Source of the DNA: Auanema rhodensis
Lineage: Eukaryota > Animalia > Nematoda
NCBI GenBank assembly: GCA_964057225.1
Contig: OZ059899.1
Coordinates: forward strand, 14,508,001-14,572,000
Direction of reading: 5' to 3'
DNA length: 64,000 nucleotides
Shown: piece after piece, positions 956 to 60,158 of the stretch
Numbering within the stretch: the stretch's first letter is position 1
How the letters are laid out: each line of letters opens with the position of its first letter
The notes under the pieces: generated by a model
The model's database searches: none
The model's input: the letters and a program-made list of their open reading frames with translations, nothing else
What the model was told of the DNA's origin: nothing
Position numbers and translations under genes: made by a program

Positions 956-1594
956 TTTACCAGTAGCAAGAAATTCTAAAATAGGAAAATAGACGAAAAA
1001 GGTAAATTTCAATTGCAATATAGATAAAATTCAAAAAGGAAATTGAGATAAGACTTGTCTTCGTAATGATTTTAAAACCTTCTAGAACAGTTTTAATGAG
1101 ATGATAGCAAGAATGAACGAATTCACATGAATTGCTTACTAAAACTTCAAAGATTCTCCTTGAAACAGAAAAATTGTGGTGTTTCAGTTTGAAAAATCAG
1201 GCGTGACAATTTGTGTCAGCACTTTTCTGACGCCATGAAAAAGCTCGACGCTGGCAAATGTGCTTCGCGACGGAAATGGCATATTACGTACTATGCTTTT
1301 GAAATGAATATATTAGTTACTTAATTATTTATAAATTTTTTACTTTGTAATTAAATTTATTTGTATGAGCATTATAACTGGGATAATATTCAACAATATA
1401 TTTGAAAATTGGAAAGCTGATAGGGTGCCTAATAGGGAATCGACAGTGTGTGAAAAACATATATAGTTGTTTAATTAATTTAAGTGTAAAACTCGTATAA
1501 AATATATAATTACTTTAATAGAAATGTTCAAGTTTAATAATTTACATGTATAATTTAAAAAAATTTTTCTTCATCAAAGACATTTGGGGGTGAT

Positions 1595-4500
1595 TTATGC
1601 TGACACTTTCTTTAAAGAACTAAGTCCACCGGCTTTTCGAATTTCTGCCATTAAACTTCCAACTAAATCCGAAGGCATAGGAGCCTGCTTTTCCACCTAA
1701 ACAATTGATTAATTTCTGTTTTTTTTAATTTTCAAATACTGGACTGGTTTTCTTAAGGATTGCTTTCTGATTGATCAAATCTCGTGAATTGATAAGTGGC
1801 GGAGCAACAGGAGGCGATGGTGGAACATTGTTATTATTAGATATGCTAGGTAGCCGCTTCGTGTTTGACGTGCTGAAATTTAAAAAATGAATTCTGGTTA
1901 TTTTCGTGACGTGACATCTTTTTTTTAAAACGTATGTTGCTCGATAAAGCGAATTTCATTTTTGTATTGTAATTGGCGTTAACCCGGTTGGTCATGAGAT
2001 TTGTCTCATGGCTACTGTTATCAATCATGTTCAATTAAGTTCTAGGTAATTTTTTTTCTTTTTGAATGTAGGTTCACCTCGGCGATGACAGTAGATTACT
2101 GGGAGGAGGAGGTGGTGGCGGTGGAACTACTGTAGTAGGGGTAGTAGTTAGAGATGGCGGTGGAGGGGGAGCTGCAGGAATGCTCGAAACCGGTGTGTTA
2201 GGTGCACTCTTTGACGTAGATGGAGACTGAAAAATAAAGTTTTAAATAAAATATTTCTCTTTTCACTGTTGCTTACCGTGTCTAAAACACGACCTAATGC
2301 GATTCCGCTTCTTTCTTTTGGAGCTCCAACAGAACGCAACACTGGGAAGTTGTTAGTTATTTCCGCTTCTAATGTCGTAGGCTTGGGAGAAATCGGGGTG
2401 TCGTAGCTCTTTCTTGATGGAAGAGTTTTAGCTTTTTCAGCTGGAATCAATTTCTTTGGCTTTCTTATTGGAGAGTTGAGTGGAGAGTTTGTAACTTGTG
2501 CTTCATTTGAAGTTATAACAGCACTCTTCAATATAACAGTCGAAACCGGCTCCTCAGTGTTGGCAGCAGGTGCGTTCAAATTTTTACGAACAAATTTGTT
2601 ATTATTCTTTTCGTTTGAGTTGATAAGATTACTATTTCCGCTGGTATTATAATGTGGTGACGATTTTGCAGTTGTTAACGTCTTAGATATTGTTGGGGAA
2701 CTTTTTGCCACTACTGATCTTCCAATCTCAATCGTCGTACCAGTGGCGTCAGTTCGAATGATATCAGATTTTTTTGTTTCTGGTTTTCTTTCCATAGAAA
2801 CGCGTTTGTCCACAGTGTTCACAGTTGTGACGACTGGTGACGTATCCTTGACGGGCGTTTTGGCAGCAACACTTGTACTGTTTGGTGTGGCATATGACGG
2901 TGTCGGGGAATCAAAGTATCGCAAACCGGTGATTGTTGGACTATCCTTGAGAGTGAAAGCTGATGGACGATTTACAACACTCGCGTTATCCGGCAAACGA
3001 GGGGTTGGAAGCTTCTGCGTCACGTGTGGCAGTTTAGGGCTGCTCATCTTGTTCGGAGGATGTCTGACTCTATCTTCAACACTAACTGAGTTAACAACGA
3101 CTTGGCTGCTCCATCGAGTCATATGAGGAATCGGTGTACTGGGAACAGGAGGAGGAATAGGTGATGTAGCTTTCGACGTAATTGTGGGTGACTTCATATT
3201 CATTGGAGAACGATGTACATGGTAAGTCGCCTTCGTAATATTTTCTTTTTTTGAAGTGGATGTGGTTATGACAGTCGAATTTGGTGGAACTCTAGGTGAA
3301 GAGGGCGAAAGCCTTGGTTTCGGGCTAGATTTGCCTTGTGCTTCCTTATAAGATCCTGTTTCTGACTTTGGTGAGACAGGCGAAGGAGAAGGTAATGACG
3401 ACATTGAAATGCGTTTAAGCTCCTGCTCTTTTCGCATGAGATCTCTAGCATCCTAAACGTATAATTTGAAATCTAGACTTGAATTTATGTCTCTTACCTC
3501 AGCAATACGATCTATAGCTTTCTGTTTCTCATCGCTTGACTTTCGTTGCGGCTTTGTTGTTCGGATGACGTTTGAATTAATATCAAGTGTTGATGTTTTT
3601 GATATTGGAGATCTATTCGAAAGCTTGGGTGAATTACCCTTTACAACACCTGAATCAGCGCTATCTTCAGAAGCTGCTGGTGAAATCGAAGAAGATTTTG
3701 GTGTTACAGGTCTAAGAATAAGATTTTGAAAAACACGAACAAAAACCATCGTTAACGTACCTTGAAGTTCCAGGGGAAGAAAAGGGTGAAGGTGACAACG
3801 GTTTCACCATATTAATGCTTTGTTGACCGGCTACTATCGTTAACGGTGTTCTAATTGGAGCAGGGACTCTGAAGTTTTGTCATTTTTAAAACATCAAGCA
3901 TGAAGCTGTACGTCAAACCTTGGTTGGAAGAGATCAGGTGCTAATGATGGACGTTTCTTCCTGTCAATTGTCTTTAATGACATTGTGTCATTAGTATACA
4001 GGCCACTTTCTCTAACAAGACTCATTACTTCATCATGATCTCTATAAAGCTCAACCTAAACTAATGATTTGTAAGAATAATTCTAAAAACTGGTCTTGCC
4101 TGTAGCTTTTTGACCTCTTCTGTTTCACCTGAAATTGATTTCAAGGCTTTCCATCTACTGAATTTAGCAGCTAGAGCTTCGTACTTGTTCTCAAGAATGA
4201 TTTCTTCTTTTGATCTAGAAATAGCCTTAGGCGATTCTTTTGGACCCATAGTTTGCTTTTGCTGCTTGTTAACATTATCCGATAGTCTGGGTTTAACGGG
4301 TTCCGATACAACTGATGAAATATCAGCAGCCTTTCTAGACGGTTTAGCAGGCTGTTTAGGCTGTGGTACAACGGGTGAAGATAAAGCTTGCCCTGCCGTT
4401 ACAGGTGATACTGGTGCAGCAGATGATGTAGCATGGACTGAAACTGTTGGCGGTGTTGGAGCTGAAAACAAATGAACCATATGCTATGTGCATTAGCTGT

Positions 4501-7500
4501 TTACCAGCTCGCTTTTTGGATGTTGAAACAACACTATCATTCTCGAATACGGACGGTGGCAACGGAGCTCTTTGTTTCGGACGACCATCATATCGCGTGA
4601 CGGAAATTGATTTCAACCTATAGAACAAATAATAATGATAATAAAAAAGAAAATGATGTACTTGTAATCATCGCTAAGTTGAAAATTCGATTGCCGCTCA
4701 ATGTGTGGGACATCGGAAATAGGTTCGGGCGACAGTGCTGATGATGATCTAATGGTGCCATGAGGAGAATAGTGAATAACACCAGCTTGTATCATAGCCG
4801 AAGCAGAGATGTTCGAAGAGTTAGAGCAGCTGGTAGTTGAACGATCTCTAGCCTGCAAATAGATATGATCAGCGTTTTATTAGCACAATGACATGGCATT
4901 GTTGTGATGTAGTTAAGCCATTTATATATAAAAATATAATAAAATGAAATGAAAATTGAAAAGAAAAGGAAAAGCAACAAAAAAATGAAAGAAAAGTGAA
5001 AGAGCCGATGGGTTTGATCGATTTCTACTGACCAGGAGATCGGTGACGGCTCGAAAAGCTGACAAGCTGTGTCTATCCTGTCAACGCAAATCTCCCTTTT
5101 GTGGCGGCAGCGTTGCAAAAAAAATTTTTTTCAGCTTACCACTTCTTCATCGTTCACAACGTCTTGTACGGGATTCAAGTCTGCCTCGAATTTCGTATTG
5201 TCAGAAACAATTTTTAGAGGCTCGGCTTTCATTTCTCGTTGTTTGGAAATTACTTCAGGAGCATGTTGTGACTGTTTTATCTCCGTTGGTTTCCTGCTAC
5301 TCTTCTCTCCATTCACATCAACAGCTGAAATCATTTGTGTTTATAGTTAGTTAGTATCATCACATGATCTTACCTCTTTCCTCGTATGGCTGATCAATCA
5401 AAGGAGGTGGGGGTGCTACTTTGGGCTTTTTCTTTTTTGCGTTTTGCGTTTTTGAATCTGTCGTTTTGGTTTTGCCTGATTGATTGGAAGTTGAGGATTC
5501 GATGAGCGCAGGCTCTTCCTTAGTAGGCTGATCAATCTGTTCTTCTGATACAATAGTGCTACGGTACGAAATAGGCGTAGAAGGTATAATGCTATTGATC
5601 TCAGATAAACTGAAATAAATAGAATTGAAGAATGACGTTTCTTGATTGAAATTAAAAGAATGAAGAAACAGAGGGGTAGTTCTCTGAATATATATCACAA
5701 TGAAACGGATTTCATGACACGGCTCATAACGATGGGAAAGGTTGATGACAAACTACTTCTGCCTGGGAATCTCACGTCGTTACGTTAAGTTTAACGGTAA
5801 GAACGTCAACGCAAATAGCCTCAGTTAATTTATAACATAATAATAATTAGTATAGTTAGTATAGTTAATAAGATATATGGAATTAGTAATACATATAATG
5901 ATTTTCAATGTAATGCGTTCTAACTCTATACTACTACAAGTTGACATACGATATTGAAAAGACTGTATAAGAGCTTATTCTATACTTCTCTCTTTAATCT
6001 ATACTGATGCCATATTAGTTGTAGTATATGGATAAGAAGTCAGAATATACACACCATCGTTGTGTCTGTTATCTCTTCCAAGTGCTAGATGTCTCATAAG
6101 AGTCTCAACATTTCTCAGAATGTCAGATAGATGGTCCTTTATAAGCGAGGCAACACTTTGGTATTTACCTTTAGATGAAGAGAACTGACACGGTTGTCCT
6201 GTGTGAACTCAAACATAACTCTACGTCAAATATTCGCAGATTTTAATGGTTTGTCCATATAAACAAATGCATAATCTCAGGGTTATTATAGGTTTTTCAA
6301 GTTTTATTGAACAGAATATATTTCTTTGGAATTTCAAGCTCAAGTTTTATTGACAATAATATGATTAATCAACCACATTTTTTCATGGAAATGATAAGAA
6401 GAAAAAGAATATTATGATATAATGATATGATTGAGTTTCATAATCATGCGATGACGCTCTACTTTTCACAAGCATTGTTGAAGCTTTATATTTAAGGTGC
6501 AAAACCCTAGTAAACATAACGGTTTTCAGGGGGTTCTTGGTCAAAATTTGAACGAAAATATAGAAGAATTGACACGTGAGCACGTGAAAGGACATATTTG
6601 CTGTTCGTATTGAAGAGGAAAAAATGTTTTTGTGAACAGTAAAAGAATATAAAAGAAAATGCAGAAAGAGAGAAGAGGATTTGTGAATTGTTCAGTGGAG
6701 TGAAAGAAGAACTTTCATAACGTAAAAGTGTTGGATGAGTTGACAACTAAGCAATTAACTCAGTTTTGATGTTGATGGTCGCACACTGATGTAACCTGAA
6801 GCCTACAAATAGTCGTCAACTAGCTTGCTACTTCGACTTTGTACAGTAAACACACAACAAAATCAGACAATTCAACATGATAGAATGCAAGATTGTTCTT
6901 GTAATTATCAGTAATAAGAAGAAAATTGGTTAGGTGGTGTGCATTACGATAACAGGTCGAGTATGATGTTGATTTTTACGTTGACATTGGAAATATAAAA
7001 TGAAAATAGAGGATGAGGGAGACTAATCATGATGTATACAAGGGAAAGTTGAAGAATCTGTCGAATATGCGATCTGAATCGGATTCTGAATCTCAAACAA
7101 TCGTCCTCTAACCCTCGCGTATAGGAATCATTTACATAAAGCGAAGTAGAAAACCGTTATATATTGAATATATGTATATCCATTAGTGTTAACTATATGT
7201 ATAGTGACACTTGAATCAAATTACACTGACAGATGAGAAATCGTTGATCTTTTCAAGTTTTATGAAAATGCTAAAGCTTTTATAAAAATGCCACAAAATC
7301 TATTATTATATGTTATAATTCTATTTTTGATAGCAGAAAACTGTGGGTATAGCTTAGCAATTTACATTATTCAGTCATGTGTCAGCTGTTTCGATTTTTT
7401 TTGGTTTGCCGCTCAGACCAATTTTAAACATTTTCAGCTGAGTTGAAGTCATCCAAAAAGGAAACAGGACACAATAGGAAGCTATATAAATCCGGGCGTC

Positions 7501-8187
7501 TGTATAGCTATTTGAGAAGTGACATACAGACTAGCATACAACGGTTGCGAGATTGAGGACAAATCGCTGTAGTTTGATGCTGGCGGTATGAGAAGGAAGA
7601 GAGGAAAATTCGGAGGGATAACAACGATGATGTCGCTCTCTGTTTGGATGTCAACTCATACGCGATTGAGGATATATTGAAAGCGGACAAGATGATGATG
7701 AAGAAGGAAGCTTATAAAAATAAAAAATTAAATTCTCTATATATCTCTCTCTCTTTATGTTTTCCGCTCTTTCTATATTTCAGTATGAATATATACGGAC
7801 CTGTTCTCGACCATTTTGTTGTCAGCTGTAACGGGCTGTGGAGCTTTCGACTGACTGTTCTCTGTATCTAGCTCTGCTGATGCTGGTTCCTTCGACTTCT
7901 AAAAACGGAATAAGACGGCTTGTTCCATATTTGCTTAGCAACATGTAAAAGTTTTTTTTCTTTTAGAAACTGTATGGATACATAAACAGATGAAGCTATT
8001 ACAAACAATATGCTTACAGTATGGATCAACCATCACGAAAAACATGCAGAAAGTGTTTTTGAAACTTTTCAATTCGTTATTGTTACTTTAATAGATAAGA
8101 GTACATGAAATTTGGTGAAAAAATTTAAAAATAACTTACTCCTCTTCGAAAAAGGGAAGAAAGTATTCCATTTTTCTTCTTGGCCAT
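1595..8187 (-). CDS. Large Ser/Pro-rich WH2-domain actin-binding protein with KRAP-like motifs (Cordon-bleu/COBLL1-like architecture), ~1,150-1,200 aa
   Basis: Frame-consistent exon chain from ATG 8187 (MAKKKNGILSSLFRRG, 8187-8140) through exons near 7.8, 6.8, 6.1, 5.6-5.4, 5.3-5.1, 5.07, 4.85-4.66, 4.6-4.5, 4.46-4.1, 4.05-3.5 kb, then ~3452-2277, ~2226-2078, 1872-1740 and 1696-1595. Last exon encodes VEKQAPMPSDLVGSLMAEIRKAGGLSSLKKVSA* (WH2), preceded by polyproline. Exons upstream of 5.6 kb are less certain. Confidence 0.75.
1598..1696 (-). other. C-terminal WH2 (G-actin-binding) motif
   Basis: LMAEIRKAGGLSSLKKV fits the WH2 pattern of an amphipathic helix followed by an LKKV motif. A second degenerate copy, SRDLINQKAILKKTSP, lies in the preceding exon (1740-1790). 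Confidence 0.8.
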
Positions 8188-10101
8188 ATTCTCTTGACCA
8201 AGTATTCAAGTCCTGCAAATATTTTAGTTAAATTTGTTAATTATAGGATATAATAACCATATTTAATATAAAAAGTTCAAAAAGAAAAACGTTTGAGATG
8301 TTGGAAAAATATTGAATAAAAAAGAAAATTTGATTTTAGCACGCCAGTTAGTAGGCGGTACTGAACAACTATATGGTCCCCCATAAAACGATCGTCTGGA
8401 AGAAGTGTGTTGGCCGGGTGAACCACATTTCGAAGAGTTAAACAGGAGGTAACGCTACAGAGGAAGCTCAAAAACGGTTGATAAGCTTTAACTCATAAAG
8501 GTTATGATTCTGATACATAATGAGGTGGTATGAATCGAGGTAATTGTAAAGTTAAGGAAGAGGGAACAGTTAATGTTGGCATTCAAACTATTTGATTGTT
8601 AAAAGTCTGCGGAATGTAAAAGGATGCCGACTTGAGAACATGGTGGTTATGACGATAAGAAGAATAATGAATTCGTTATGCTAGACCTGTATATGATATA
8701 TTATACTAATTAATATTATTATTATTATTATTGTATAATTGTGAAATGTTTATTATAGTTCATACGATTTAAAAAGCAAAAATAATGCATGAAAGCTGCT
8801 ACATGAATAGACAGAACTATCAGAATTGCATTTGCGTATTGCAAATCAGAGAGAAAACGCATTGTGAAGTAGAAGAAACAGAGAGAGTTTAAAGCATCAA
8901 AGTCATAAATGAAAAGTTTGAAAAGATTAAAAGTTGATGAGAATAATGTGAGTGCACAATACTAAAAATGGAAAAATGAGGTGGGAGAGGAAGAGTAGGT
9001 TCATGTGAATAAATGACTAGAACGAACGCGATAAGGAAATGCCACATCAAACGCTATCGATTATACAAAACCAGGTAAGGAAATTGATTAATTTCAAATT
9101 CAAGCTCAGACATTTGCTAGTGTTCCTAATTTCTATCGATTATGCTTTTAGTGTGGAAGTTTGTACTAAGCTTTACCATAGAATGAATTCAATATGGAGC
9201 GAAAAGACGAAAAAAACAACAAAAATGCTTCTGAACAACATGCTTCTTCATAGAGTATTGATGACTAGTGATTATACAGTTTAAGGAAAAAGAAGGGAGA
9301 GATGAACCGTTAAACTAACATATGAATATTTGAAATACATGTTTCATTAAGGAAAATGCTCAATTATTGAAAATATTGTTATAGTACTATTATTAGCGAT
9401 TATAGCAAATTGATAATAAATACGTAAGAAGGAACAATACTATGTTGATAGATAGAGCTTAGTTAGAAAGTTAGTTAGACGTATAGTAATGGCAGACATA
9501 ATATAAATAGCATAAACAGTAATCGAATGTGAGAGAGATAAAAGACAGAAAAAGTGAATGAAAAGAGAGGAGAGTGTAAAGAGGATAGTCGTCTGCTTGA
9601 ACAGAAAGGTTGGTAAGAAAGTTAGGAAGCATGATAACGTATATGAATAATAAAAAAATGTTTGTTTGATGTATGGTGGTGGTATTGCCAATACATACTA
9701 TGCGTGTGTGTGTGTGTGTGCCAATAATATAAGAAAATGTGGATTTTACTATATATATATGAATATATAGCTTCTTCTTCTTCTATATATGGTACTTTTC
9801 TTTGTATAATACTATAATATATAGTTGTAGTACTATATGAATTTTAAAATCATTAAGATTACACATCTCTATGTTCTATGTTTCAATGAAAAGTGGAAGA
9901 AAAGATGGATACGTTAGATGAATCATGTACATGCATATAGTTATGAATAAGTACAAGACTTTCATTAAGTTATTCAGAAAGTCAGTGTAAGAAATGAATG
10001 TAATTATGACGTCATATAATACTTCCGTTCTTGAATAGTAAATGCAGTTCTGACCTCTAAACCTTGAAATAGTATTACTACAGATGCATCAAATGAAATT
10101 A

Positions 10102-13072: not shown

Positions 13073-15029
13073 CTCTTTTGAAAGTACATCATTTTAAGAA
13101 AAAGAGAAAAAAAAGAAGAAAAAACTATTCACATACAGTGAAATCAAATATAAATGCCTATTATAACTATAACTATAAAAACATATTGAACAAACTGTAT
13201 ATACTGAACGCGTGCTAGAAATTCTTTAAAATTAGATTCAAAAGATAAAGTTTCGATAATGTCTTCAAGGCGTTTTACTCTGCCTCTATATTTGCTCAAA
13301 CCAAATGATAAGTTTGATAAAAACTGCAAGTTGTGACTGTTAATGATTTAAAGATTAAATCATATAAGATACATTAAATGAATGTAATCAGTCGTTTCAG
13401 CTTCAGCAACTGCCCAGCTTTGTTCGGTTGATTATCAGAAAATGAAACAATTTATGTGAGAGCAAAGTCAGAATACCTTGAGAAAATGAATAAAAAATTG
13501 CTGACAGGTTAAAAGATAAAAATACAAAGACTAGGGTAATGTCCGACTATTAGTAAACGTTCAAGGGTTCACAACAAAATGCTTAAATGGGACACGGCGA
13601 CCATGACCAAACAGTTGTGAGGAAACCCCAAGCGAGAAGACTAGCGACGTATCTAGCAGGCTGTACATCGTTGACAACACACTTCCGTAGGCTATCGTTT
13701 CTCCTCTGTCATTTGGTGTTTTTAGTCGCTTGTATATCTGTAGCCGAACTATCCTCATGAAAGAGGGTCAGAATGTGACATGCAGCGATTAGAAAGTTAT
13801 TTTTGAATGAAAAAAATCGGAAGACGAGAGAAAGAAAAGATTGCTGGAAGTATATGGCGGTACGGCTGAAATGAGAATACGGGCATGACTGATTATAAGT
13901 AGAAGAGGCGATTTGAACTGGCTTTTTCAGACTGTTTGGGAGAGGGGATAGAACACGATATATACAAGGAAGTAGCTTTGAATTTCGAACTTTGATAAAT
14001 ATGACCGGTAACTAGCAAAGTAGAAAATAGAGATATGAGAAGAAATAGAGAGAAAGAAGAGAAAAGAACAAGAATGAGGAGGTGAACAAGCAGTTTTAAG
14101 GACAAGGACGAGATGAGACAAAATGGAAGCGCTTAAGATAGATGAATGAGGTGTCTCGAAGTGTGTTGAAACGAGATCTGGCTGCTTATGTCGTTATCCG
14201 TCTCATCCTCAATCTTTTTTCATCTTCTGCTCCTTATTCATTGTTTTTTTGCCTCATCTTCATAGTTCAGTCTTCTTTTCGACTTCTCCACATCCTAAAG
14301 TCTTCTCTTCTGTTCCTGATCATTAACAATTCATTGATTGACATGAAAAGCAGATTACAGAAGAATTTGATAATCAATCTCCAGCTATTCCGTTGTTATA
14401 ACATTGTCACTAATATGTTAAATAAAGAGAGAAATAAAATAAATATAATTATAATAATCAACTGAGTAAGGTAATACATATAAATAGTATAGTATATATA
14501 TACATATATACTATATATATAATTAATTATATATATATAATACCACCTACATTTAAAAAATAATAACGTTTATAGCTGTAGTTGGTATTCAGTACTTATT
14601 ACTATTAAATATCCAATAAAAATGATAAAGATAACGTGTCTACATTTTTTAATATTTGAACTTGATTGTTATACACTTATAAACTTATATACAGAAAAGT
14701 TTTCAATTTAATAAAGGTAGTAAAATATAAATCAATACTTTTAATAATATTAATTATTATTTTAATCACTTTTAAAAGACAAATGAATGAATGAGAGAGA
14801 AAGAGTTAAAGAAGAGGAGAGCAATGGCTTCGTTTTGCTCCCTTAATCTAAACATGAAACGATAAGAGATAATTTATAAAATAGTAGAAAGAGCAGACTG
14901 AATGCATGCAGCAGTAAGAAGATAAGGCAAACCTACAGCGAATAGTGTACATGGAAGAGAAGTGGAAAAATAGAAAAAAAGGAATACTGGATGATGAAAA
15001 GTGATGTAGACAAGGTAGAGGAATAAAAT

Positions 15030-15063: not shown

Positions 15064-15637
15064 TGCATTAGAGATAGATAGAAAAGGAAAAGGAACCTAA
15101 GCTATGAAAAGCTGAATACAAACAAATCCAATAAGACAAGCTTCAAGCAATGAGCTAGCCTGTCATGCTATATGAAGTCAAGATTCGAGAAAGACAGGAA
15201 GAAAAAAACTATGTACACTAATCCTATACTCACTCATGATATGATTTGAGCAAATTCAAGGAATAAATAAACAATATAATAAACAAAATAAGTTTAAGTC
15301 ATAAATTAAAATATAAATATTATATTATATATTATATAATTTTATAATGATATTATAATATTACAACAAAAAAAAAGCTACACTTTTATGTTCGTCCAAA
15401 AGCAAATGTGAAAGTATGTTCTATCACTCAAATCCAAATACTTTTAAATGGAAATATGAAACATCGTTATGAATCATATAATAAGCTTATTACTTAATCA
15501 TATTATTAATAGAAAATTCAATAATTTTACTTAATCATTATAGTTTAAGAATTTTGTTTTAACAAAAAAATTGAACTAACCTGCATTTCCTGTTATTCAA
15601 CCGGTCAACGCTTCCACTTTTGCCAAAAATGTGTATT

Positions 15638-15672
15638 CTCGTGCATGGTACGTCATTCACGTGATTACGTGA
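15638..15672. promoter_or_regulatory. ACGT/E-box cluster upstream of mua-3 and the WH2 gene
   Basis: ctcgtg, tacgtca, tcacgtga and tacgtga within 35 nt in otherwise very AT-rich DNA. Confidence 0.4.
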
Positions 15673-51340: not shown

Positions 51341-53613
51341 GTTGGTTCTAATTTATTCGATTTTTACATTGAAGAACCTGTTTGATCAGCTCGATTTCCA
51401 AATTATCACTGTTGTCATTTGTGCTCGAGTTGATATTTCGAAATTAGCATATTACGTTATTCTAAAAAAAGTATTTGATTGCACGTGAATTACACGTGGT
51501 GCTTAGAATTTATCTTAGTTGTTAGCAGACGCGATGAAACGGTTGTTTATTAACCTTCTCTTTCTATTACTCTCTCTCTCTCTCTTGTTTATATTCTTAC
51601 TATCTATAGAAAAGCTTTTGTTCCAAGATCTGAGATCCAACGAGCAGTTATATCTTGTGAATGCTCATAATATACTTATTAAACAGCTATTTGTGCTATT
51701 CTTTTTGCATAATATAACTGAAATATGTAATCAGATTTCTTCGGCGTGCATTGTTTCGATTGCTTACTCGTCTGTGCAACACAGACAGACCACCATTATA
51801 ACTGACTGGGAATAATATGGAAAAAAAAAGAAACTGAAATTACATGAGTACCAGATTGAGAGTATGAACAGTTATTATTGCCTTAACATGTATCCGATTT
51901 GCTTCATCTTCTTCTCCTTCTTCGTCAGCTTCGTCTTTATTTCTTTTTTTTTTGTCGCCACACAAAAATGTGTGATTAGCTAGCAGCACAACATTTTTTG
52001 CAATTTGTTTCTCAGTTTTTCACAAAAATTTGCCTTCTTTTCCTCTTCACTATCTATTTTTTTGAAATCGTATGGTAATTTCGATTACTTTAGCACATAT
52101 AATTTCGTTTGAATTTTTATATTTTGCTCTATATATGGCATAACGTCCGTTTTTAGCCAGAATAATACTAATAGCACCCGGAAGAAAATCTGTGGAATGA
52201 GAGGCGTTTAAAACAAAGCTGCTGAAAAGTTTCAGCGGCATTAGTAGTCAGCCGTTTGAGGTTCTTTTGTGTTTTGCAATGTCATAACGTGAAATTTTAT
52301 GAACAAGTTAAACATATATACATCTGGTGTTTATTGGAAATTTCTGACTAATGTTCTGGATCTACGTACATAAATCAAAGTAGAGCAGCATTATTGAGAG
52401 ATTGAGCATCCTTGAAATAGCTTTGTTACTTAATACCCTGAGTTGGCGGTATGGTCCATTCATGAACTTCTTCAGTAATCAACATCTTTAATCTGCTGCC
52501 AGAGTTCTAGCTTACACACCGATCTTCACTGTCCTCTAAATCTTGATTTTTTTATTTTCATGCCTGAAGCAAATTAGTATTTTTGCTGTTCTGGCGATAT
52601 ACTAATTTGTTTTAAGGCACTAAAAAGAGATTATGGGTTACCAAAGTCTTATGATTCATCTATTTGCCAGATGTTTAAGACATGTCCCTTCATCCGGTTG
52701 TTAAAAAATGCAAATTGTTGTATCTCAATGTGTCTGTAGTATCGAAACTGCTGTGCTTGAACAGGCAGCTCATTCTAAGCTGTTTCGATTCAATCTTTTT
52801 TCCGATACGATGCCGCACTCCTCCAATCGTAAGTTTTAAACTTTTCTTGATGCATCATCCTGTGCTTCATAACCTTTATTGTCCTTCTTCCTGTTCGTGT
52901 TCGTTGCACACATTCCAACTCTGATCAGTAAAAGTGCTGTTAGCGTTAAGGAAGCTTCATAGTTTAGTCCAAAGGTTAAATGAGAAAATGATGAAGTTTG
53001 ATGCGGGAAAGCTTATTTACGACGGAATAGAAACTTGTTGTGAGCTTGGCACGGAATTTAGTTTGTGCCATGGTCAATCATTTTCATTTCAAAAGGATAA
53101 AAAAAGAAAATATTACTGAATTAGTAGGATTTTGAAGCCTTATTTTGTGATTTTCACCCAACTTTTACATGCCATTACCAATGCATATTACACAATTTCA
53201 ATATATATATATATATATATATATATGGTCAATTTAGTGAACTATACACGATGATTCACGATAGGATACGCTGAACAGCTTTCGTGCATAAGCAACGCTT
53301 TCACGAAACATTGGAATGTTATTCCAATAATTGTTGATCATTCCATTTAGTAAAGTATTTGACAAACTATAACTCAATTATCTAAATATGGTCATTAAAG
53401 AAGAAAAAAGAAGTATTTAGATTATAGTCAACCAATGATTAACAGCTGGAGTCCAACACACAAAAAAGCGCTTGTACGCAGATTCATATGCGTATGAGCA
53501 AATTGAACTCTTATAGATATGCATGTCTGCTTATATCTATCATGTCCTTTTTATCATTTTTTATAATTATGTATTGGTATTTACTTGTAGTTTATACGAA
53601 TAGTAATGTTAAT

Positions 53614-53652
53614 AACGTGAAATCCGCGTGAAATGAACGTGAAGTTCACGTG
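53614..53652. promoter_or_regulatory. Cluster of four CGTG / E-box-like motifs at exact 11-bp period
   Basis: CGTG at 53616, 53627, 53638 and 53649 (aacgtgaaatc cgcgtgaaatg aacgtgaagtt cacgtg). Confidence 0.45.
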
Positions 53653-55473
53653 TAGTGTCCAGTTTCATTTATTGTCTGCTGAAGTGCTGAATAGAACGGT
53701 TGTACACATCACTTTTCTTCTTCTGTTTTTACATTCCGTTCAGTTGGCGTTTTTTATTTCCTTTTTTACAGAAAAAAAAGAGAAATAAGTAATGAAACTT
53801 GAGAAAGAGAGTGACGGGGAGATACAGAGAGAGAGGGAAAGAGGGAATGAGCAATGTGTTTAATGTGTTTCAATTAAGAAGTTTCGTCTTCCTTCATCAT
53901 GCTAATATCAATTCTGCAGAGCAGAAAGTCATGATGATGCTCATCATCTTCTACTTCTCTTTTCCTTATGGCTAAGAAATAAAATATGATCTCATAGTTA
54001 ACTAACTAACTAACTATAGTATGGAAATGCGAAATAGACATACTTTGATCTTGATTCAACGTATCGGGTACTAGTCGTTCAAGCTCTATACATTCATGTT
54101 TTGGAATTCAAACTGAAATGTGCTACTATCCCATATACATACTCAAGATACACACGCTTGTAAATGCCTAAACACAACTAATGGCAACCAAAACACGAAT
54201 TCAGACAACAAAACCATTAAGACGATTTCAATCTCTATGTGATCTACTTTTTTCTTTGCTGATATTCTCGAATCATTTGACAAGCAAAGGAGGAAAGATA
54301 GAAGATCAAGCACATTTGGAAGAATATTTCGGCTTGTTCGATCAGAAAGCAACAGAAGCAAACAAATAAGCAAAAAAAACGGAAAATGAACAGAAGAGTG
54401 TCTATTGTTCTTATAATAAGTTAGAACTTAACGCATTTTTCAATTGAAGTTTCCTAAACTTCTAATATATTGTTTCCTTTCTTCCTTTCTTATTCTCTCT
54501 CTCTCTCCCCCTTCCTCTCTCATTCCCTCCCATAACTTCTTAATCCAATAGCCCCCTGTCTGTCTTTTGCTCTATTCATGAAATGTCCAAATTGCAGAAA
54601 CTTCTACTATCTTTTATTGTTCATAATTCTACAAAATATATGATTGAATATTCTTTATTCTAACCTTATTTAACAGACAAATTTCAATATTTGTTCCAAT
54701 CAGAATACATAAGTATATATCTAATTTACTTCCTTTCCTCGACTTTTTTTTATTAATTCCTCACACATACTCCTAAAAACTAAGAAGTTTTTCAACTTTA
54801 GCATGTACTAACTGTTGTTTCTTATGAAAATTGAAAGAAAACACCTATTTCAATAACACATACACACGTGCAAGTCAATATGGCTTGTCCTTTCTAATAC
54901 ATCACACACGGCTTCTCTGACAACAATATTCAGTCAGTGGAAAAGGGCCAATGAATTTGTGAATTGACTACTTGAGACTTTTCTGTTTCAAACCCCCCCC
55001 CCCCTCTCTTTTTCTTGCCCAAATGTTTGAAATCTTTGGTTTTATTAGAAAACTATTCATTTTTATCAGTTTGTTGGCTGAAACTTCATAAAAGTTGAGC
55101 ATTTCATGAGCATGTCTGGCCTTTCTTTTCAGCAGGTAGTGTTCATCTTTGATTCTCCAGCACGCCTGCTTCCAGCTTTAACCAGCTTGAACCAAATTAG
55201 AAATTTCCGGACTTAATCTGCAAAGTTCAAAAACGTTTATTTAAGAATAGATTGTAAAAGGTAGCAACAGCTTCAGTTATAATGATTACTGAACATTGAC
55301 AAATCAGAGGGAAATATCGCGCATTGGTGAAAATAAATAAACTTGTACATAGTGGATACGTAAAACGGCTAGTTAGTCAAGTTGAATCTTTACTCTTTTA
55401 AGTGATTTTTCCTCTTTATTCCGTCCTTTTCATCGACTTTATTTCCTTTTTTCCTCTGTACTATACTCTGCAG

Positions 55474-56032: not shown

Positions 56033-56808
56033 CTCTTTCTTTCTTTAAATCTTATGGTATCTTCTTTTCTCTCTCTAGATTTTAGAGTAGAACTCATAAT
56101 AAGAAATATCAAATGAGAAATTGAGTTTATGTACACGCTTTGAGCAGACACACACACACACACATACACATACAGACGATATCTCCGTTGCCTATTTGAT
56201 TTAAATTTTATCTTTCACAATCTACCTTCATCTACACGATATTCATAACGTTCTCTTCAATCAGATTTCAAGTATCTTGTCTGATGATATCCTGTAAGCA
56301 TCTTCACCATCATCAACTAATGTTTTTATATATTTCACTCATTTTACAAACTATACAACTATAATCGTTAACTATACTATTACTTTTTCTTATATTATTA
56401 TATACTATATGTTATAAATATGTATATATCCTATATCTATAAGGAACATTTATATTTATTTCTGAATAAAAAGATATACAAAGGAAAAGACTTACATTAT
56501 GTTGATCAGTGATCATCTATTTTTCATTCTTTTCATCGAATTATACAATTAGATAACGATGACATCATATGGCAATTTTCGTCCTTCCGGCTAACTCGGA
56601 ATCTCATCCAACATTGGTATCTATCTATAGCTCTATGATTGATAAGCTAACCATGCTGCTCAAGCTTGAAATAGCTTGAAGCCATCCCACTGATGTCGAT
56701 ATCAAACATATATCTGAAATACTAAAGTATACTTCATCTCAGTAATACTTAAATACAACCGAATCTCAGCGATTAAATGCATAAAAATGAAATTTGATAT
56801 GCAAATCT

Positions 56809-56870
56809 TCACGTGAGGAAATATGCGGCAATGATCACGTGAAAAAGTACGTGACAATGAGATCACGTGA
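56809..56870. promoter_or_regulatory. Cluster of three TCACGTGA plus one TACGTGA
   Basis: CGTG at 56812, 56838, 56850 and 56866. TCACGTGA is the canonical bHLH-ZIP (TFEB/HLH-30-type) site. Confidence 0.45.
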
Positions 56871-59058: not shown

Positions 59059-60158
59059 CAATATATTTATCTGTAACCATTGTATTTACTTTTTGAATTA
59101 AAGCTATAAGCTGCGCACTTGCCAGCTTTCACGCATATTCAAGATGATGATCAGTAAGTTTTTAAAATTTTTCCACCAATATATCAATCAGTTGATCAAA
59201 GTGAAAGCAAAATGAAATATTAGGTTGTCAATGCTTCATTCTTCTACATACTCTTGAACTTGATTGAGCTTCATACATGTATGCATGATTAGTGAGTTTA
59301 GGAACATGTGATGAAGATGATGATGACGATGATGATGAAGATGATGTTACTCTTAGTGAATACTTGACAAAGGCTTTACTTCAATTGTTCATGCAAGAAT
59401 GACTCAAATTTATAAGAAAACATATTTTTTTGTTTGAAAAATCGTATTTGCATCTAAAAATTCAAACTTGCAACTTTGAACTTACTCATCTATTCCTACA
59501 CACATAAACTTGCACCACTCATATACTCATCCAAACAGATACATTCAATTTTAATTGTTGTTTCTCTGCAATAAGAGATCATACTCCTTCTATTTTTCAT
59601 ATTATCAGTAATTAGCTCCAAGAATAATTAGCATAACTGATGATTACACGTACTCTGTACACGTGGCGTCATCACGTGAAATCCATCATATAATATAGAA
59701 ACTGAATGCATAAAACGGTTGCTAATGCTTATAAGTTTAGTCTTCCTCTAATCCAGGGTCTAGGTCGTTACCCATATTTATCTATTCTACTTTGTTTTCT
59801 CATATCTCCTCTTTCATCTTCTTTTCAAAAAAAAAGCTTAAGAAACATTGGAAATTTACAATTTTACTTCAATATTTGGTTTCAACTATTTGCAGTCTTT
59901 TTGGCAGATTTTCAAAATTATATTTATATGTGAATCTATATATTATATGATAATAATAGTTTATATATACTATCAGTTCATCATACTCTTTTCAAACTTA
60001 TCAAAAAAGTTTGACAAGTTCGTTTCTTCATCATTGTTTATACAATTTATAAACATCTTATCCTTCAATCCGAACTTTCAACTTTGAAAAACTGTCATCT
60101 AAAATGGACGACAGAGTATATCCGTTTGTCTTCTTTCCTACACCCATTTTCTTGTTTC

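What the first reader, a model, noticed from the sequence alone, without database searches (positions are those of the whole stretch)
1595..8187. Nematode protein with Cordon-bleu/COBLL1-like design: KRAP-like motifs, polyproline and terminal WH2
Seen in sequence: after splicing, the protein has three basic-Ala-Pro-x-Pro-Pro motifs. These are KKKKPKVAPPPP (~5403-5438), RPKQRAPLPP (4554-4583) and KKRAAPTPP, the last formed only across the 4462-4504 intron and so invisible in the ORF track. It also has an N-terminal basic/aromatic motif (KKNGILSSLFRRGKSK), a long Ser/Pro/Thr disordered middle, polyproline tracts and a terminal WH2 (LMAEIRKAGGLSSLKKV) with a degenerate second copy. Established: vertebrate Cobl/COBLL1 combine KrRAPpPP motifs that bind the syndapin SH3 domain with C-terminal WH2 domains, and are generally described as absent from C. 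elegans. Inference: this may be an unrecognised nematode Cobl-like homolog or a convergent syndapin-actin linker or nucleator. I could not find the Cobl ubiquitin-like domain.
Basis: partly seen in the sequence, partly recalled or inferred. Interest (0 to 1): 0.78.

Follow-up and report, generated by a model that had tools for sequence, protein, structure and literature searches.

The report
Nematode disordered protein with Cobl-type WH2
This is a real 14-exon nematode gene for a mostly disordered, proline-rich protein whose last 20 residues look like the actin-binding WH2 motif of vertebrate Cordon-bleu, but it lacks the domain that defines that family, so it is a candidate actin-assembly scaffold whose relation to Cordon-bleu is open.

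Summary
No RNA evidence could be obtained.

The model is collinear end to end (55% identity) with an unnamed 1031-aa protein of Auanema sp. JU1783. That gene has the same intron positions and the same RRM-gene neighbour.

AlphaFold2 predicts residues 1-470 of the Auanema ortholog as disordered except one confident helical hairpin. Pfam finds no Cobl ubiquitin-like domain and only a sub-threshold WH2 (16.2 bits against a cut-off of 23.1).

The terminal WH2 is specifically Cobl-like. Against all PDB sequences only Cordon-bleu WH2 chains match (E 0.003-0.04), ungapped, sharing LMxxI[RH]xxGGxxxL[KR]KV. Language-model look-alikes of the C-terminus are also COBL clusters, but the N-terminal half gives none.

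KRAP-like motifs 2 and 3 are conserved in Auanema. They are absent from the partial Heterorhabditis bacteriophora ortholog, and such motifs also occur in unrelated syndapin ligands.

Verdict: an uncharacterised nematode WH2/polyproline scaffold that probably works like Cobl-like. Family membership is not shown, because the defining domain was tested and not met. No orthologs were found beyond these two species, but the searches were limited. The scan's index holds no earlier Cobl or cordon-bleu note.

The parts
1595..8187 (-). Whole gene, start codon to stop. The 14 coding exons are 8187-8140, 7898-7801, 5609-5374, 5324-5140, 4852-4662, 4617-4505, 4461-4100, 4055-3919, 3868-3761, 3711-3498, 3452-2277, 2226-2078, 1872-1740 and 1696-1595. 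The product is 1083 aa.
   Evidence: In-frame assembly with GT-AG introns and one GC-AG. Collinear with Auanema P0001 at 55% identity. Same exon boundaries in the Auanema locus L001. A TTTGCAG acceptor-like site lies 27 nt upstream of the ATG.
7890..8178 (-). N-terminal basic/aromatic motif KKNGILSSLFRRGKSK (aa 4-19), split by intron 1 (8139-7899).
   Evidence: Conserved in Auanema as KKNGIFSIFRRSKSK. Its helical hydrophobic moment is not above shuffles (P=0.27), so a membrane- or calmodulin-binding role is inference only.
5402..5437 (-). KRAP-like motif 1, KKKKPKVAPPPP (aa 107-118).
   Evidence: Only loosely conserved in Auanema (NKKFNPAPAPP). The region is missing from the Heterorhabditis model.
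4545..4834 (-). Most conserved island (aa 196-277, ~90% identical to Auanema), split by intron 4661-4618. It contains VIHYSPHGTIR, IERQSN and LKSISVTRYDGRPKQRAPLPP.
   Evidence: Sliding identity. Three-species alignments A2 and A7. AlphaFold2 predicts it disordered (pLDDT <60). No Pfam or PDB match.
4554..4583 (-). KRAP-like motif 2, RPKQRAPLPP (aa 265-274). It fits the Cobl-like consensus Kr+APxpP and also the RPK(x)6P half of the capping-protein-interaction motif.
   Evidence: Consensus sequences come from PMC8282341 and PMC5491179. Identical in Auanema. Heterorhabditis has RSKQETIIQP instead.
4448..4517 (-). KRAP-like motif 3, KKRAAPTPP (aa 287-295), formed across intron 4504-4462.
   Evidence: Auanema has KKRLAPPPP, split by an intron at the same position and phase. 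Absent from the Heterorhabditis model.
3996..4213 (-). Conserved helical hairpin (aa ~374-431), split by the GC-AG intron 4099-4056.
   Evidence: AlphaFold2 on the ortholog gives two helices, P0001 348-374 and 378-401, with pLDDT >90. Conserved in all three species. Foldseek gives only generic hairpins, including dimerising ones.
3621..3780 (-). Ser-rich conserved island SSPGTSRPVTPKSSSISPAASEDSADSGVVKGNSPKL (aa 487-523), split by intron 3760-3712.
   Evidence: 80-90% identical to Auanema. No family match. A phospho-regulatory role is inferred.
2280..2378 (-). Conserved island TTLEAEITNNFPVLRSVGAPKERSGIALGRVLD (aa 923-955). This is a possible third, very degenerate WH2-like element.
   Evidence: Three-species alignment A4. 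Heterorhabditis has FSTLKKV where the window has FPVLRSV. No WH2 hit in Pfam or the PDB.
2098..2178 (-). Polyproline tracts PPPPP and PPPPPPPP (aa 973-999).
   Evidence: Conserved in Auanema and Heterorhabditis.
1746..1802 (-). Upstream degenerate WH2-like motif PPLINSRDLINQKAILKKT (aa 1030-1048).
   Evidence: Strongly conserved in Auanema. No WH2 hit in Pfam or the PDB. Its identity as a WH2 rests on the pattern only.
1604..1666 (-). Terminal Cobl-type WH2, LVGSLMAEIRKAGGLSSLKKV (aa 1061-1081). The stop codon is at 1597-1595.
   Evidence: Pfam WH2 PF02205, E=0.0083, 16.2 bits, below the 23.1 cut-off; 19 residues span 16 profile positions. The PDB-wide search hits only Cordon-bleu.

Best explanation
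The gene encodes an intrinsically disordered actin-assembly scaffold found so far only in rhabditid nematodes. The known carriers are the window's Auanema-like species, Auanema sp. JU1783 and Heterorhabditis bacteriophora.

Shown:
- A conserved 1083-aa protein whose only confidently folded element is a central helical hairpin.
- C-terminal polyproline tracts followed by two conserved LKK[TV] motifs.
- The last of these motifs aligns without gaps to the WH2 domains of vertebrate Cordon-bleu.

Inferred mechanism:
- The terminal WH2, perhaps helped by the degenerate upstream copies, binds G-actin.
- The polyproline tracts recruit profilin-actin or SH3/EVH1 proteins.
- The conserved basic-APxPP motifs dock SH3 proteins such as syndapin (SDPN-1), and the basic N-terminus targets the protein to membrane.
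- The helical hairpin may dimerise the protein and so multiply its WH2 valency.

It would then promote local actin filament formation at membranes, in the manner of vertebrate Cobl-like. Whether it descends from the Cobl family after losing the ubiquitin-like domain, or is convergent, is unresolved.
For: - Gene model and orthology.
- Disorder plus one hairpin.
- WH2: Pfam gives a weak hit with a 3-residue insertion relative to the profile.
- PDB-wide phmmer and hmmsearch at E<=10 return Cordon-bleu WH2 chains 4jhd, 6jh8, 6jcu, 6jh9 and 6jbk (E 0.0029-0.85). The only other row is an unrelated HMA domain (E 0.97). No other WH2 protein appears.
- The shared pattern is LMxxI[RH]xxGGxxxL[KR]KV, plus a QxPxPxD flank.
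- Atlas top hits for the full length and for the C-terminus are COBL clusters.
- KRAP-like motif 2 fits the published syndapin-ligand consensus. Motifs 2 and 3 are conserved in Auanema, including a shared intron through motif 3.
Against: - No biochemical or expression data exist, and read laying gave nothing.
- The WH2 scores are below Pfam's cut-off, and the PDB E-values are marginal for a roughly 20-residue motif.
- The second and third WH2-like motifs have no statistical support.
- The KRAP motifs are missing from the Heterorhabditis model.
- Atlas scores below 0.9 are leads only.
- Dimerisation of the hairpin is a guess.
Confidence: 0.6

Rival explanations
1. True but highly diverged nematode member of the Cobl/Cobl-like family. 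It would have lost the ubiquitin-like Cobl domain while keeping the layout of N-terminal regulatory site, KRAP motifs, long linker and C-terminal WH2.
For: - The terminal WH2 matches only Cobl WH2s in the PDB, without gaps and with the same long linker and GG.
- Atlas top hits are COBL and Cobl-like clusters.
- KRAP2 fits Kr+APxpP exactly.
- The order of elements parallels that described for Cobl-like in PMC8282341: N-terminal CaM site, KRAP1, then KRAP2 and 3, with the WH2 at the C-terminus.
- The family is otherwise unaccounted for in Nematoda.
Against: - There is no Cobl domain by Pfam or AlphaFold2.
- The N-terminal half gives no Cobl signal.
- No Cobl protein was recovered by any sequence search.
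- KRAP motifs are short linear motifs shared by unrelated proteins, and they are not conserved in Heterorhabditis.
- The similarity is confined to about 30 residues.
Confidence: 0.3
2. Capping-protein regulator of the CPI-motif class (CARMIL-, CD2AP- or CRACD-like). The conserved VTRYDGRPKQRAPLPP stretch would bind capping protein rather than an SH3 domain.
For: - RPK(x)6P matches the C-terminal half of the consensus LxHxTxxRPK(x)6P.
- Heterorhabditis loses the PxxP but keeps R-S-K and the proline at +7.
- Atlas look-alikes of the N-terminal half include DUF4592 and CARMIL_C clusters at 0.76-0.80. I recall DUF4592 as the CRACD family.
Against: - The L-x-H-x-T half of the motif is absent in register.
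- No CARMIL, CD2AP or CKIP-1 chain was hit in the PDB at E<=10.
- Pfam gives no DUF4592, CARMIL_C or RCSD hit.
- The Atlas scores are at chance level.
Confidence: 0.07
3. A disordered protein unrelated to actin, whose LKKV and proline motifs are fortuitous.
For: - No domain reaches a curated threshold.
- WH2 is short and easily mimicked.
- No functional data exist.
Against: - The terminal motif is among the best-conserved parts of a fast-evolving protein.
- It sits after polyproline tracts, as in many WH2 proteins.
- It selects Cobl WH2s specifically out of 177,635 PDB sequences.
Confidence: 0.08

Closest known systems
Vertebrate Cobl-like (COBLL1) and Cobl (Cordon-bleu)
   Same: - A C-terminal WH2 with the same unusually long helix-to-LKKV spacing and the GG pair, aligning to Cobl WH2s without gaps.
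- Basic-APxPP 'KRAP' motifs in the N-terminal third.
- A long disordered middle and proline-rich stretches.
- An N-terminal basic segment.
   Different: - No ubiquitin-like Cobl domain (PF09469), by Pfam and by AlphaFold2.
- A central helical hairpin that I do not know from Cobl proteins.
- Two extra degenerate LKK-type motifs.
- No detectable sequence similarity outside the WH2.
- KRAP motifs not conserved in Heterorhabditis.
Drosophila SALS (sarcomere length short)
   Same: A mostly unstructured protein with a proline-rich domain and tandem WH2 motifs, as described in PMC9140763.
   Different: The SALS WH2s are described as central rather than C-terminal.
CPI-motif proteins (CARMIL, CD2AP, CKIP-1, CRACD)
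   Same: A disordered context and an RPK(x)6P core inside the most conserved island.
   Different: It lacks the LxHxT half of the motif. There is no Pfam or PDB sequence match.
WIP/verprolin and WASP/WAVE
   Same: Polyproline combined with WH2 motifs.
   Different: No WH1/EVH1, CRIB or acidic Arp2/3-binding tail: the protein ends three residues after LKKV. Those WH2s were not matched in the PDB search.

Membership tests
Cobl/Cobl-like family (as defined in PMC3849942: Cobl domain plus C-terminal WH2) | [quoted passage not shown] | tested here: not met
   No PF09469 hit at E<=10 in any window exon, P0001 or P0002. AlphaFold2 on P0001 1-200 and 170-470 shows no beta-grasp fold, only disorder and one helical hairpin.
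Cobl/Cobl-like family | C-terminal WH2 domain of Cobl type | tested here: met
   Only Cordon-bleu WH2 chains match in the whole PDB (4jhd_C at E=0.0029; single Cobl peptides at E~0.035), in ungapped alignments. The support is marginal in absolute terms, since Pfam WH2 scores 16.2 bits against a 23.1 cut-off.
Cobl/Cobl-like family | KRAP motifs (Kr+APxpP / KrRAPpPP) that bind the syndapin SH3 domain | tested here: inconclusive
   KQRAPLPP fits exactly, while KKRAAPTPP and KVAPPPP fit loosely. Motifs 2 and 3 are conserved in Auanema and absent from the Heterorhabditis model. The motif also occurs in unrelated proteins. Binding was not tested.
Cobl/Cobl-like family | Detectable sequence similarity to family members outside the WH2 | tested here: not met
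   No Cobl protein appeared (exon 11, exhaustive HMMER; full-length ortholog) or (ortholog residues 179-520, E<=1). The Atlas search with the N-terminal half gave no Cobl cluster. The word-index searches are limited by length window and low-complexity words, and no profile-profile test against Cobl alignments could be run.
WH2 motif (Pfam PF02205) | Amphipathic helix followed by LKKV/LKKT, scoring above the Pfam gathering threshold | tested here: inconclusive
   Terminal motif: E=0.0083, 16.2 bits in the window and 12.4 bits in Auanema. Both are below 23.1. The upstream LKKT and LRSV motifs gave no hit.
CPI-motif capping-protein regulators | Consensus LxHxTxxRPK(x)6P | tested here: not met
   Only RPK(x)6P is present. 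Positions -7, -5 and -3 are S, T and Y instead of L, H and T (sequence, consensus). No CPI protein was hit in the PDB.
WASP/WAVE/WIP | WH1/EVH1, CRIB or SHD domain, or a C-terminal central-acidic Arp2/3-binding region | tested here: not met
   No such Pfam domains. The protein ends with LKKVSA and has no acidic tail.

The most novel reading that the evidence does not exclude
This is the 'missing' nematode descendant of the bilaterian ur-Cobl-like gene. On this reading the lineage discarded the ubiquitin-like Cobl domain but kept the KRAP/syndapin-docking region and the Cobl-type C-terminal WH2. Nematoda would then not have lost the family as published, and the Cobl domain would be dispensable for the ancestral function.
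Probability: 0.3. Interest if true: 0.65.

Novelty: new variant of a known kind. Interest (0 to 1): 0.45.

Why it matters
Cordon-bleu family proteins are reported as lost in nematodes (PMC3849942). Worms nevertheless build syndapin-dependent, actin-rich membrane structures.

A conserved nematode protein pairing syndapin-type SH3 ligands with a WH2 that looks specifically like Cobl's would matter in either of two ways. It could revise the family's phylogenetic distribution. It could instead be a clean case of convergent assembly of the same short-motif toolkit.

In both cases it gives a genetically tractable candidate for a WH2-based actin-assembly factor in rhabditid worms. It also allows a test of whether the ubiquitin-like Cobl domain is needed for that function.

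The practical caveat is that only two orthologs were found and no C. elegans counterpart was identified here.

Tried and rejected
1. RNA support. The look-up of sequencing runs found four runs holding 69% of the sampled words, but read laying placed no contigs. There is therefore no transcript evidence, and both caps are used.

2. Word-index protein search with exon 11 found nothing, as expected from its length window.

3. The exhaustive HMMER search with exon 11 found only the Auanema ortholog. Exon 11 is the least conserved part, so this says little about distant relatives.

4. The full-length ortholog search found only itself. The region search (179-520) added only Heterorhabditis P0002. 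Low-complexity words filled the 8000-candidate limit, so the absence of a C. elegans or strongylid ortholog is not established.

5. P0002 is not on record for DNA retrieval. Its lack of KRAP motifs and of the last exon could not be checked against the genome. Its UniRef name 'PH domain-containing protein' is not reproduced by Pfam.

6. Metagenome scans with the conserved island found nothing.

7. PDB sequence searches with the KRAP2 island, the LRSV island, the upstream LKKT motif and the 152-aa C-terminus gave only chance hits.

8. Foldseek with the hairpin model returned generic helical hairpins.

9. The CPI-motif idea fits only half the consensus.

10. The amphipathic-helix test of the N-terminal motif was not above shuffles.

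11. Rfam and repeat scans of the gene and its 2.2-kb intron found nothing relevant.

12. My recollection that COBLL1 carries a GFFSFFQRSKKK-like motif resembling the N-terminus could not be tested. No tool gave me a full-length Cobl-like sequence, so I do not use it as evidence.
Full report
**Observation**

Reading the minus strand of 1400-8400, I assembled 14 exons whose boundaries all carry canonical acceptors. The donors are GT, with one GC at 4100|gcaaga. The result is a 3252-nt ORF of 1083 aa with no internal stop.

- The protein is 15% Ser, 12% Pro and 8% Thr.
- In whole-protein shuffles the basic-A(A)PxPP motifs are far above expectation: 6 overlapping matches at 3 sites against a mean of 0.05. 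So are the two LKK[TVA] motifs, at 2 against 0.13.

**Is the gene real?**

RNA evidence failed. Four runs held 69% of the sampled words, but no contig could be laid.

Comparative evidence is good.

- An exhaustive HMMER search with the largest exon found one protein, P0001, 1031 aa. It is an unnamed product of Auanema sp. JU1783.
- P0001 is collinear with my model from Met1 to the last residue at 55% identity.
- In the Auanema locus L001 the exon boundaries coincide with mine.
- The intron that splits KRAP motif 3 is at the same position and phase. The intron after ...K(K/R)LQ is also at the same position, with a GT donor in Auanema. This supports the GC-AG intron here.
- An RRM gene lies just downstream in Auanema.
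- A TTTGCAG acceptor-like site lies 27 nt upstream of the ATG.
- Other notes of this scan call the genome Auanema-like, which agrees with this result.

**Conservation pattern**

Identity to Auanema is very uneven. The conserved parts are:

- the first 20 residues;
- aa 196-278, about 90% identical and including RPKQRAPLPP;
- KKRxAPxPP;
- aa 376-465;
- aa 481-540;
- aa 925-975;
- the C-terminal 60 residues with both LKK motifs.

A region-restricted search added a partial model from Heterorhabditis bacteriophora (P0002, E=2.7e-15).

- It keeps VIHYSPxGTxR, IERxSN, LKSIxVTRYDGRxKQ, the helical region, the LRSV island (there FSTLKKV) and the polyproline.
- After ...DGRSKQ it reads ETIIQP rather than RAPLPP, and it has no KRAP motif 3.
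- Its model stops before the terminal exon.
- I could not fetch its DNA to check any of this.

**Structure and domains**

- Pfam at E<=10 finds nothing in any exon or ortholog except a sub-threshold WH2 on the last exon. That hit has E=0.0083 and 16.2 bits against a 23.1 cut-off. It places 19 residues on 16 profile positions, which implies a 3-residue insertion.
- AlphaFold2 on ortholog residues 170-470 gives one confident helical hairpin (348-374 and 378-401, pLDDT >90) in otherwise disordered chain.
- Ortholog residues 1-200 are fully disordered.
- There is therefore no ubiquitin-like Cobl domain. The highly conserved island around KRAP2 is a cluster of linear motifs, not a fold.
- Foldseek with the hairpin returns only generic hairpins.

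**The WH2**

This is the most informative result.

- The last exon searched against all 177,635 distinct PDB sequences at E<=10 hits only 4jhd_C, Protein cordon-bleu. All three of its WH2s align.
- A two-species profile sharpens this. 4jhd_C scores E=0.0029. Three Cobl WH2 peptides (6jh8, 6jcu, 6jh9) score about 0.035 and 6jbk scores 0.85.
- No WASP, WAVE, WIP, MIM, Spire, thymosin or leiomodin chain appears. From my own knowledge the PDB holds actin complexes of these, so their absence is meaningful.
- The alignments are ungapped over LMxxI[RH]xxGGxxxL[KR]KV. The nematode motif therefore shares with Cobl the three extra residues between the helix and LKKV, and the GG pair. A QxPxPxD flank is also shared.
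- The Atlas language-model search agrees. The top clusters for the full-length ortholog and for its residues 880-1031 are chordate COBL or Cobl-like (0.78-0.82). By the tool's own calibration these scores are leads only.
- The upstream LKKT motif and the LRSV island have no support beyond their pattern and conservation.

**Against family membership**

- The N-terminal half gives no Cobl cluster in the Atlas. It returns arthropod hypotheticals, DUF4592 and CARMIL_C at chance-level scores.
- No sequence search returned a Cobl protein.
- The published definition of the family rests on the Cobl domain plus a WH2, and the same paper states that the family is absent from Nematoda (PMC3849942).
- The KRAP consensus is Kr+APxpP for Cobl-like and KrRAPpPP for Cobl. 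It is shared by the syndapin-binding sites of dynamin I, Shank2 and GlyR-beta (PMC8282341). It is therefore a convergently evolving ligand motif and weak evidence of descent.

**A rival reading of the conserved island**

RPKQRAPLPP also fits RPK(x)6P, the second half of the capping-protein-interaction consensus LxHxTxxRPK(x)6P (PMC5491179). Heterorhabditis keeps R-S-K and the proline at +7 while losing the PxxP. However, the LxHxT half is missing in register, and no CPI protein is matched in the PDB or Pfam. I keep this as a minor rival.

**Mechanism**

Shown:

- a conserved, largely disordered protein;
- one helical hairpin;
- polyproline tracts;
- a terminal Cobl-type WH2.

Inferred:

- G-actin binding by the WH2;
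- recruitment of profilin or SH3 proteins by the proline tracts;
- docking of SH3 proteins such as SDPN-1 by the basic-APxPP motifs;
- possible dimerisation by the hairpin.

Together these would give local promotion of actin assembly at membranes, as described for Cobl-like.

**Novelty and score**

This is an unannotated nematode protein family without any Pfam domain. Its architecture is a variant of a known kind, the WH2/proline-rich actin scaffolds, and Cobl-like is the closest.

The claim that it is the lost nematode Cobl homolog is possible, at about 0.3, but unproven.

My searches for further orthologs, including two metagenome scans, found none. The protein searches were constrained, so the family's taxonomic range, and in particular a C. 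elegans counterpart, remains open.

Interest is moderate, 0.45.

Noticed in passing
window 4056-4099 (minus strand): This is a GC-AG intron (cag|gcaaga...tttag). Auanema sp. JU1783 has a GT-AG intron at the identical position (L001 ~14024-14067).
   Followed up: partly
window 15598-15662, 51483-51545, 53637-53702, 56756-56814, 59661-59721: The bipartite element ACGTG-(40-60 nt)-CGGTTG occurs 7 times in the window against 0.14 expected from shuffles. Other notes of this scan read it as an Inr+DPE-type promoter module. None lies at the start of the gene studied here.
   Followed up: partly
window 7480-7565 (plus strand, inside the 2.2-kb intron 2): A TATATAAA box is followed about 50 nt later by CAACGGTTG, with a loose direct repeat 113 nt downstream (7539-7564 and 7652-7677). 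This could be an intronic promoter on the strand opposite to the gene. Rfam finds nothing there.
   Followed up: no
P0002 (Heterorhabditis bacteriophora, UniRef): The ortholog is named 'PH domain-containing protein' by its source, but Pfam finds no PH domain. The model looks truncated at both ends: it starts inside the conserved island and ends by reading past the LKLKPAS exon boundary.
   Followed up: partly
L001 17609-18941 and before the window's start: Synteny is kept. An RRM-domain gene (rsp-8-like) lies next to the 3' end of the gene in both Auanema sp. JU1783 and this genome.
   Followed up: partly
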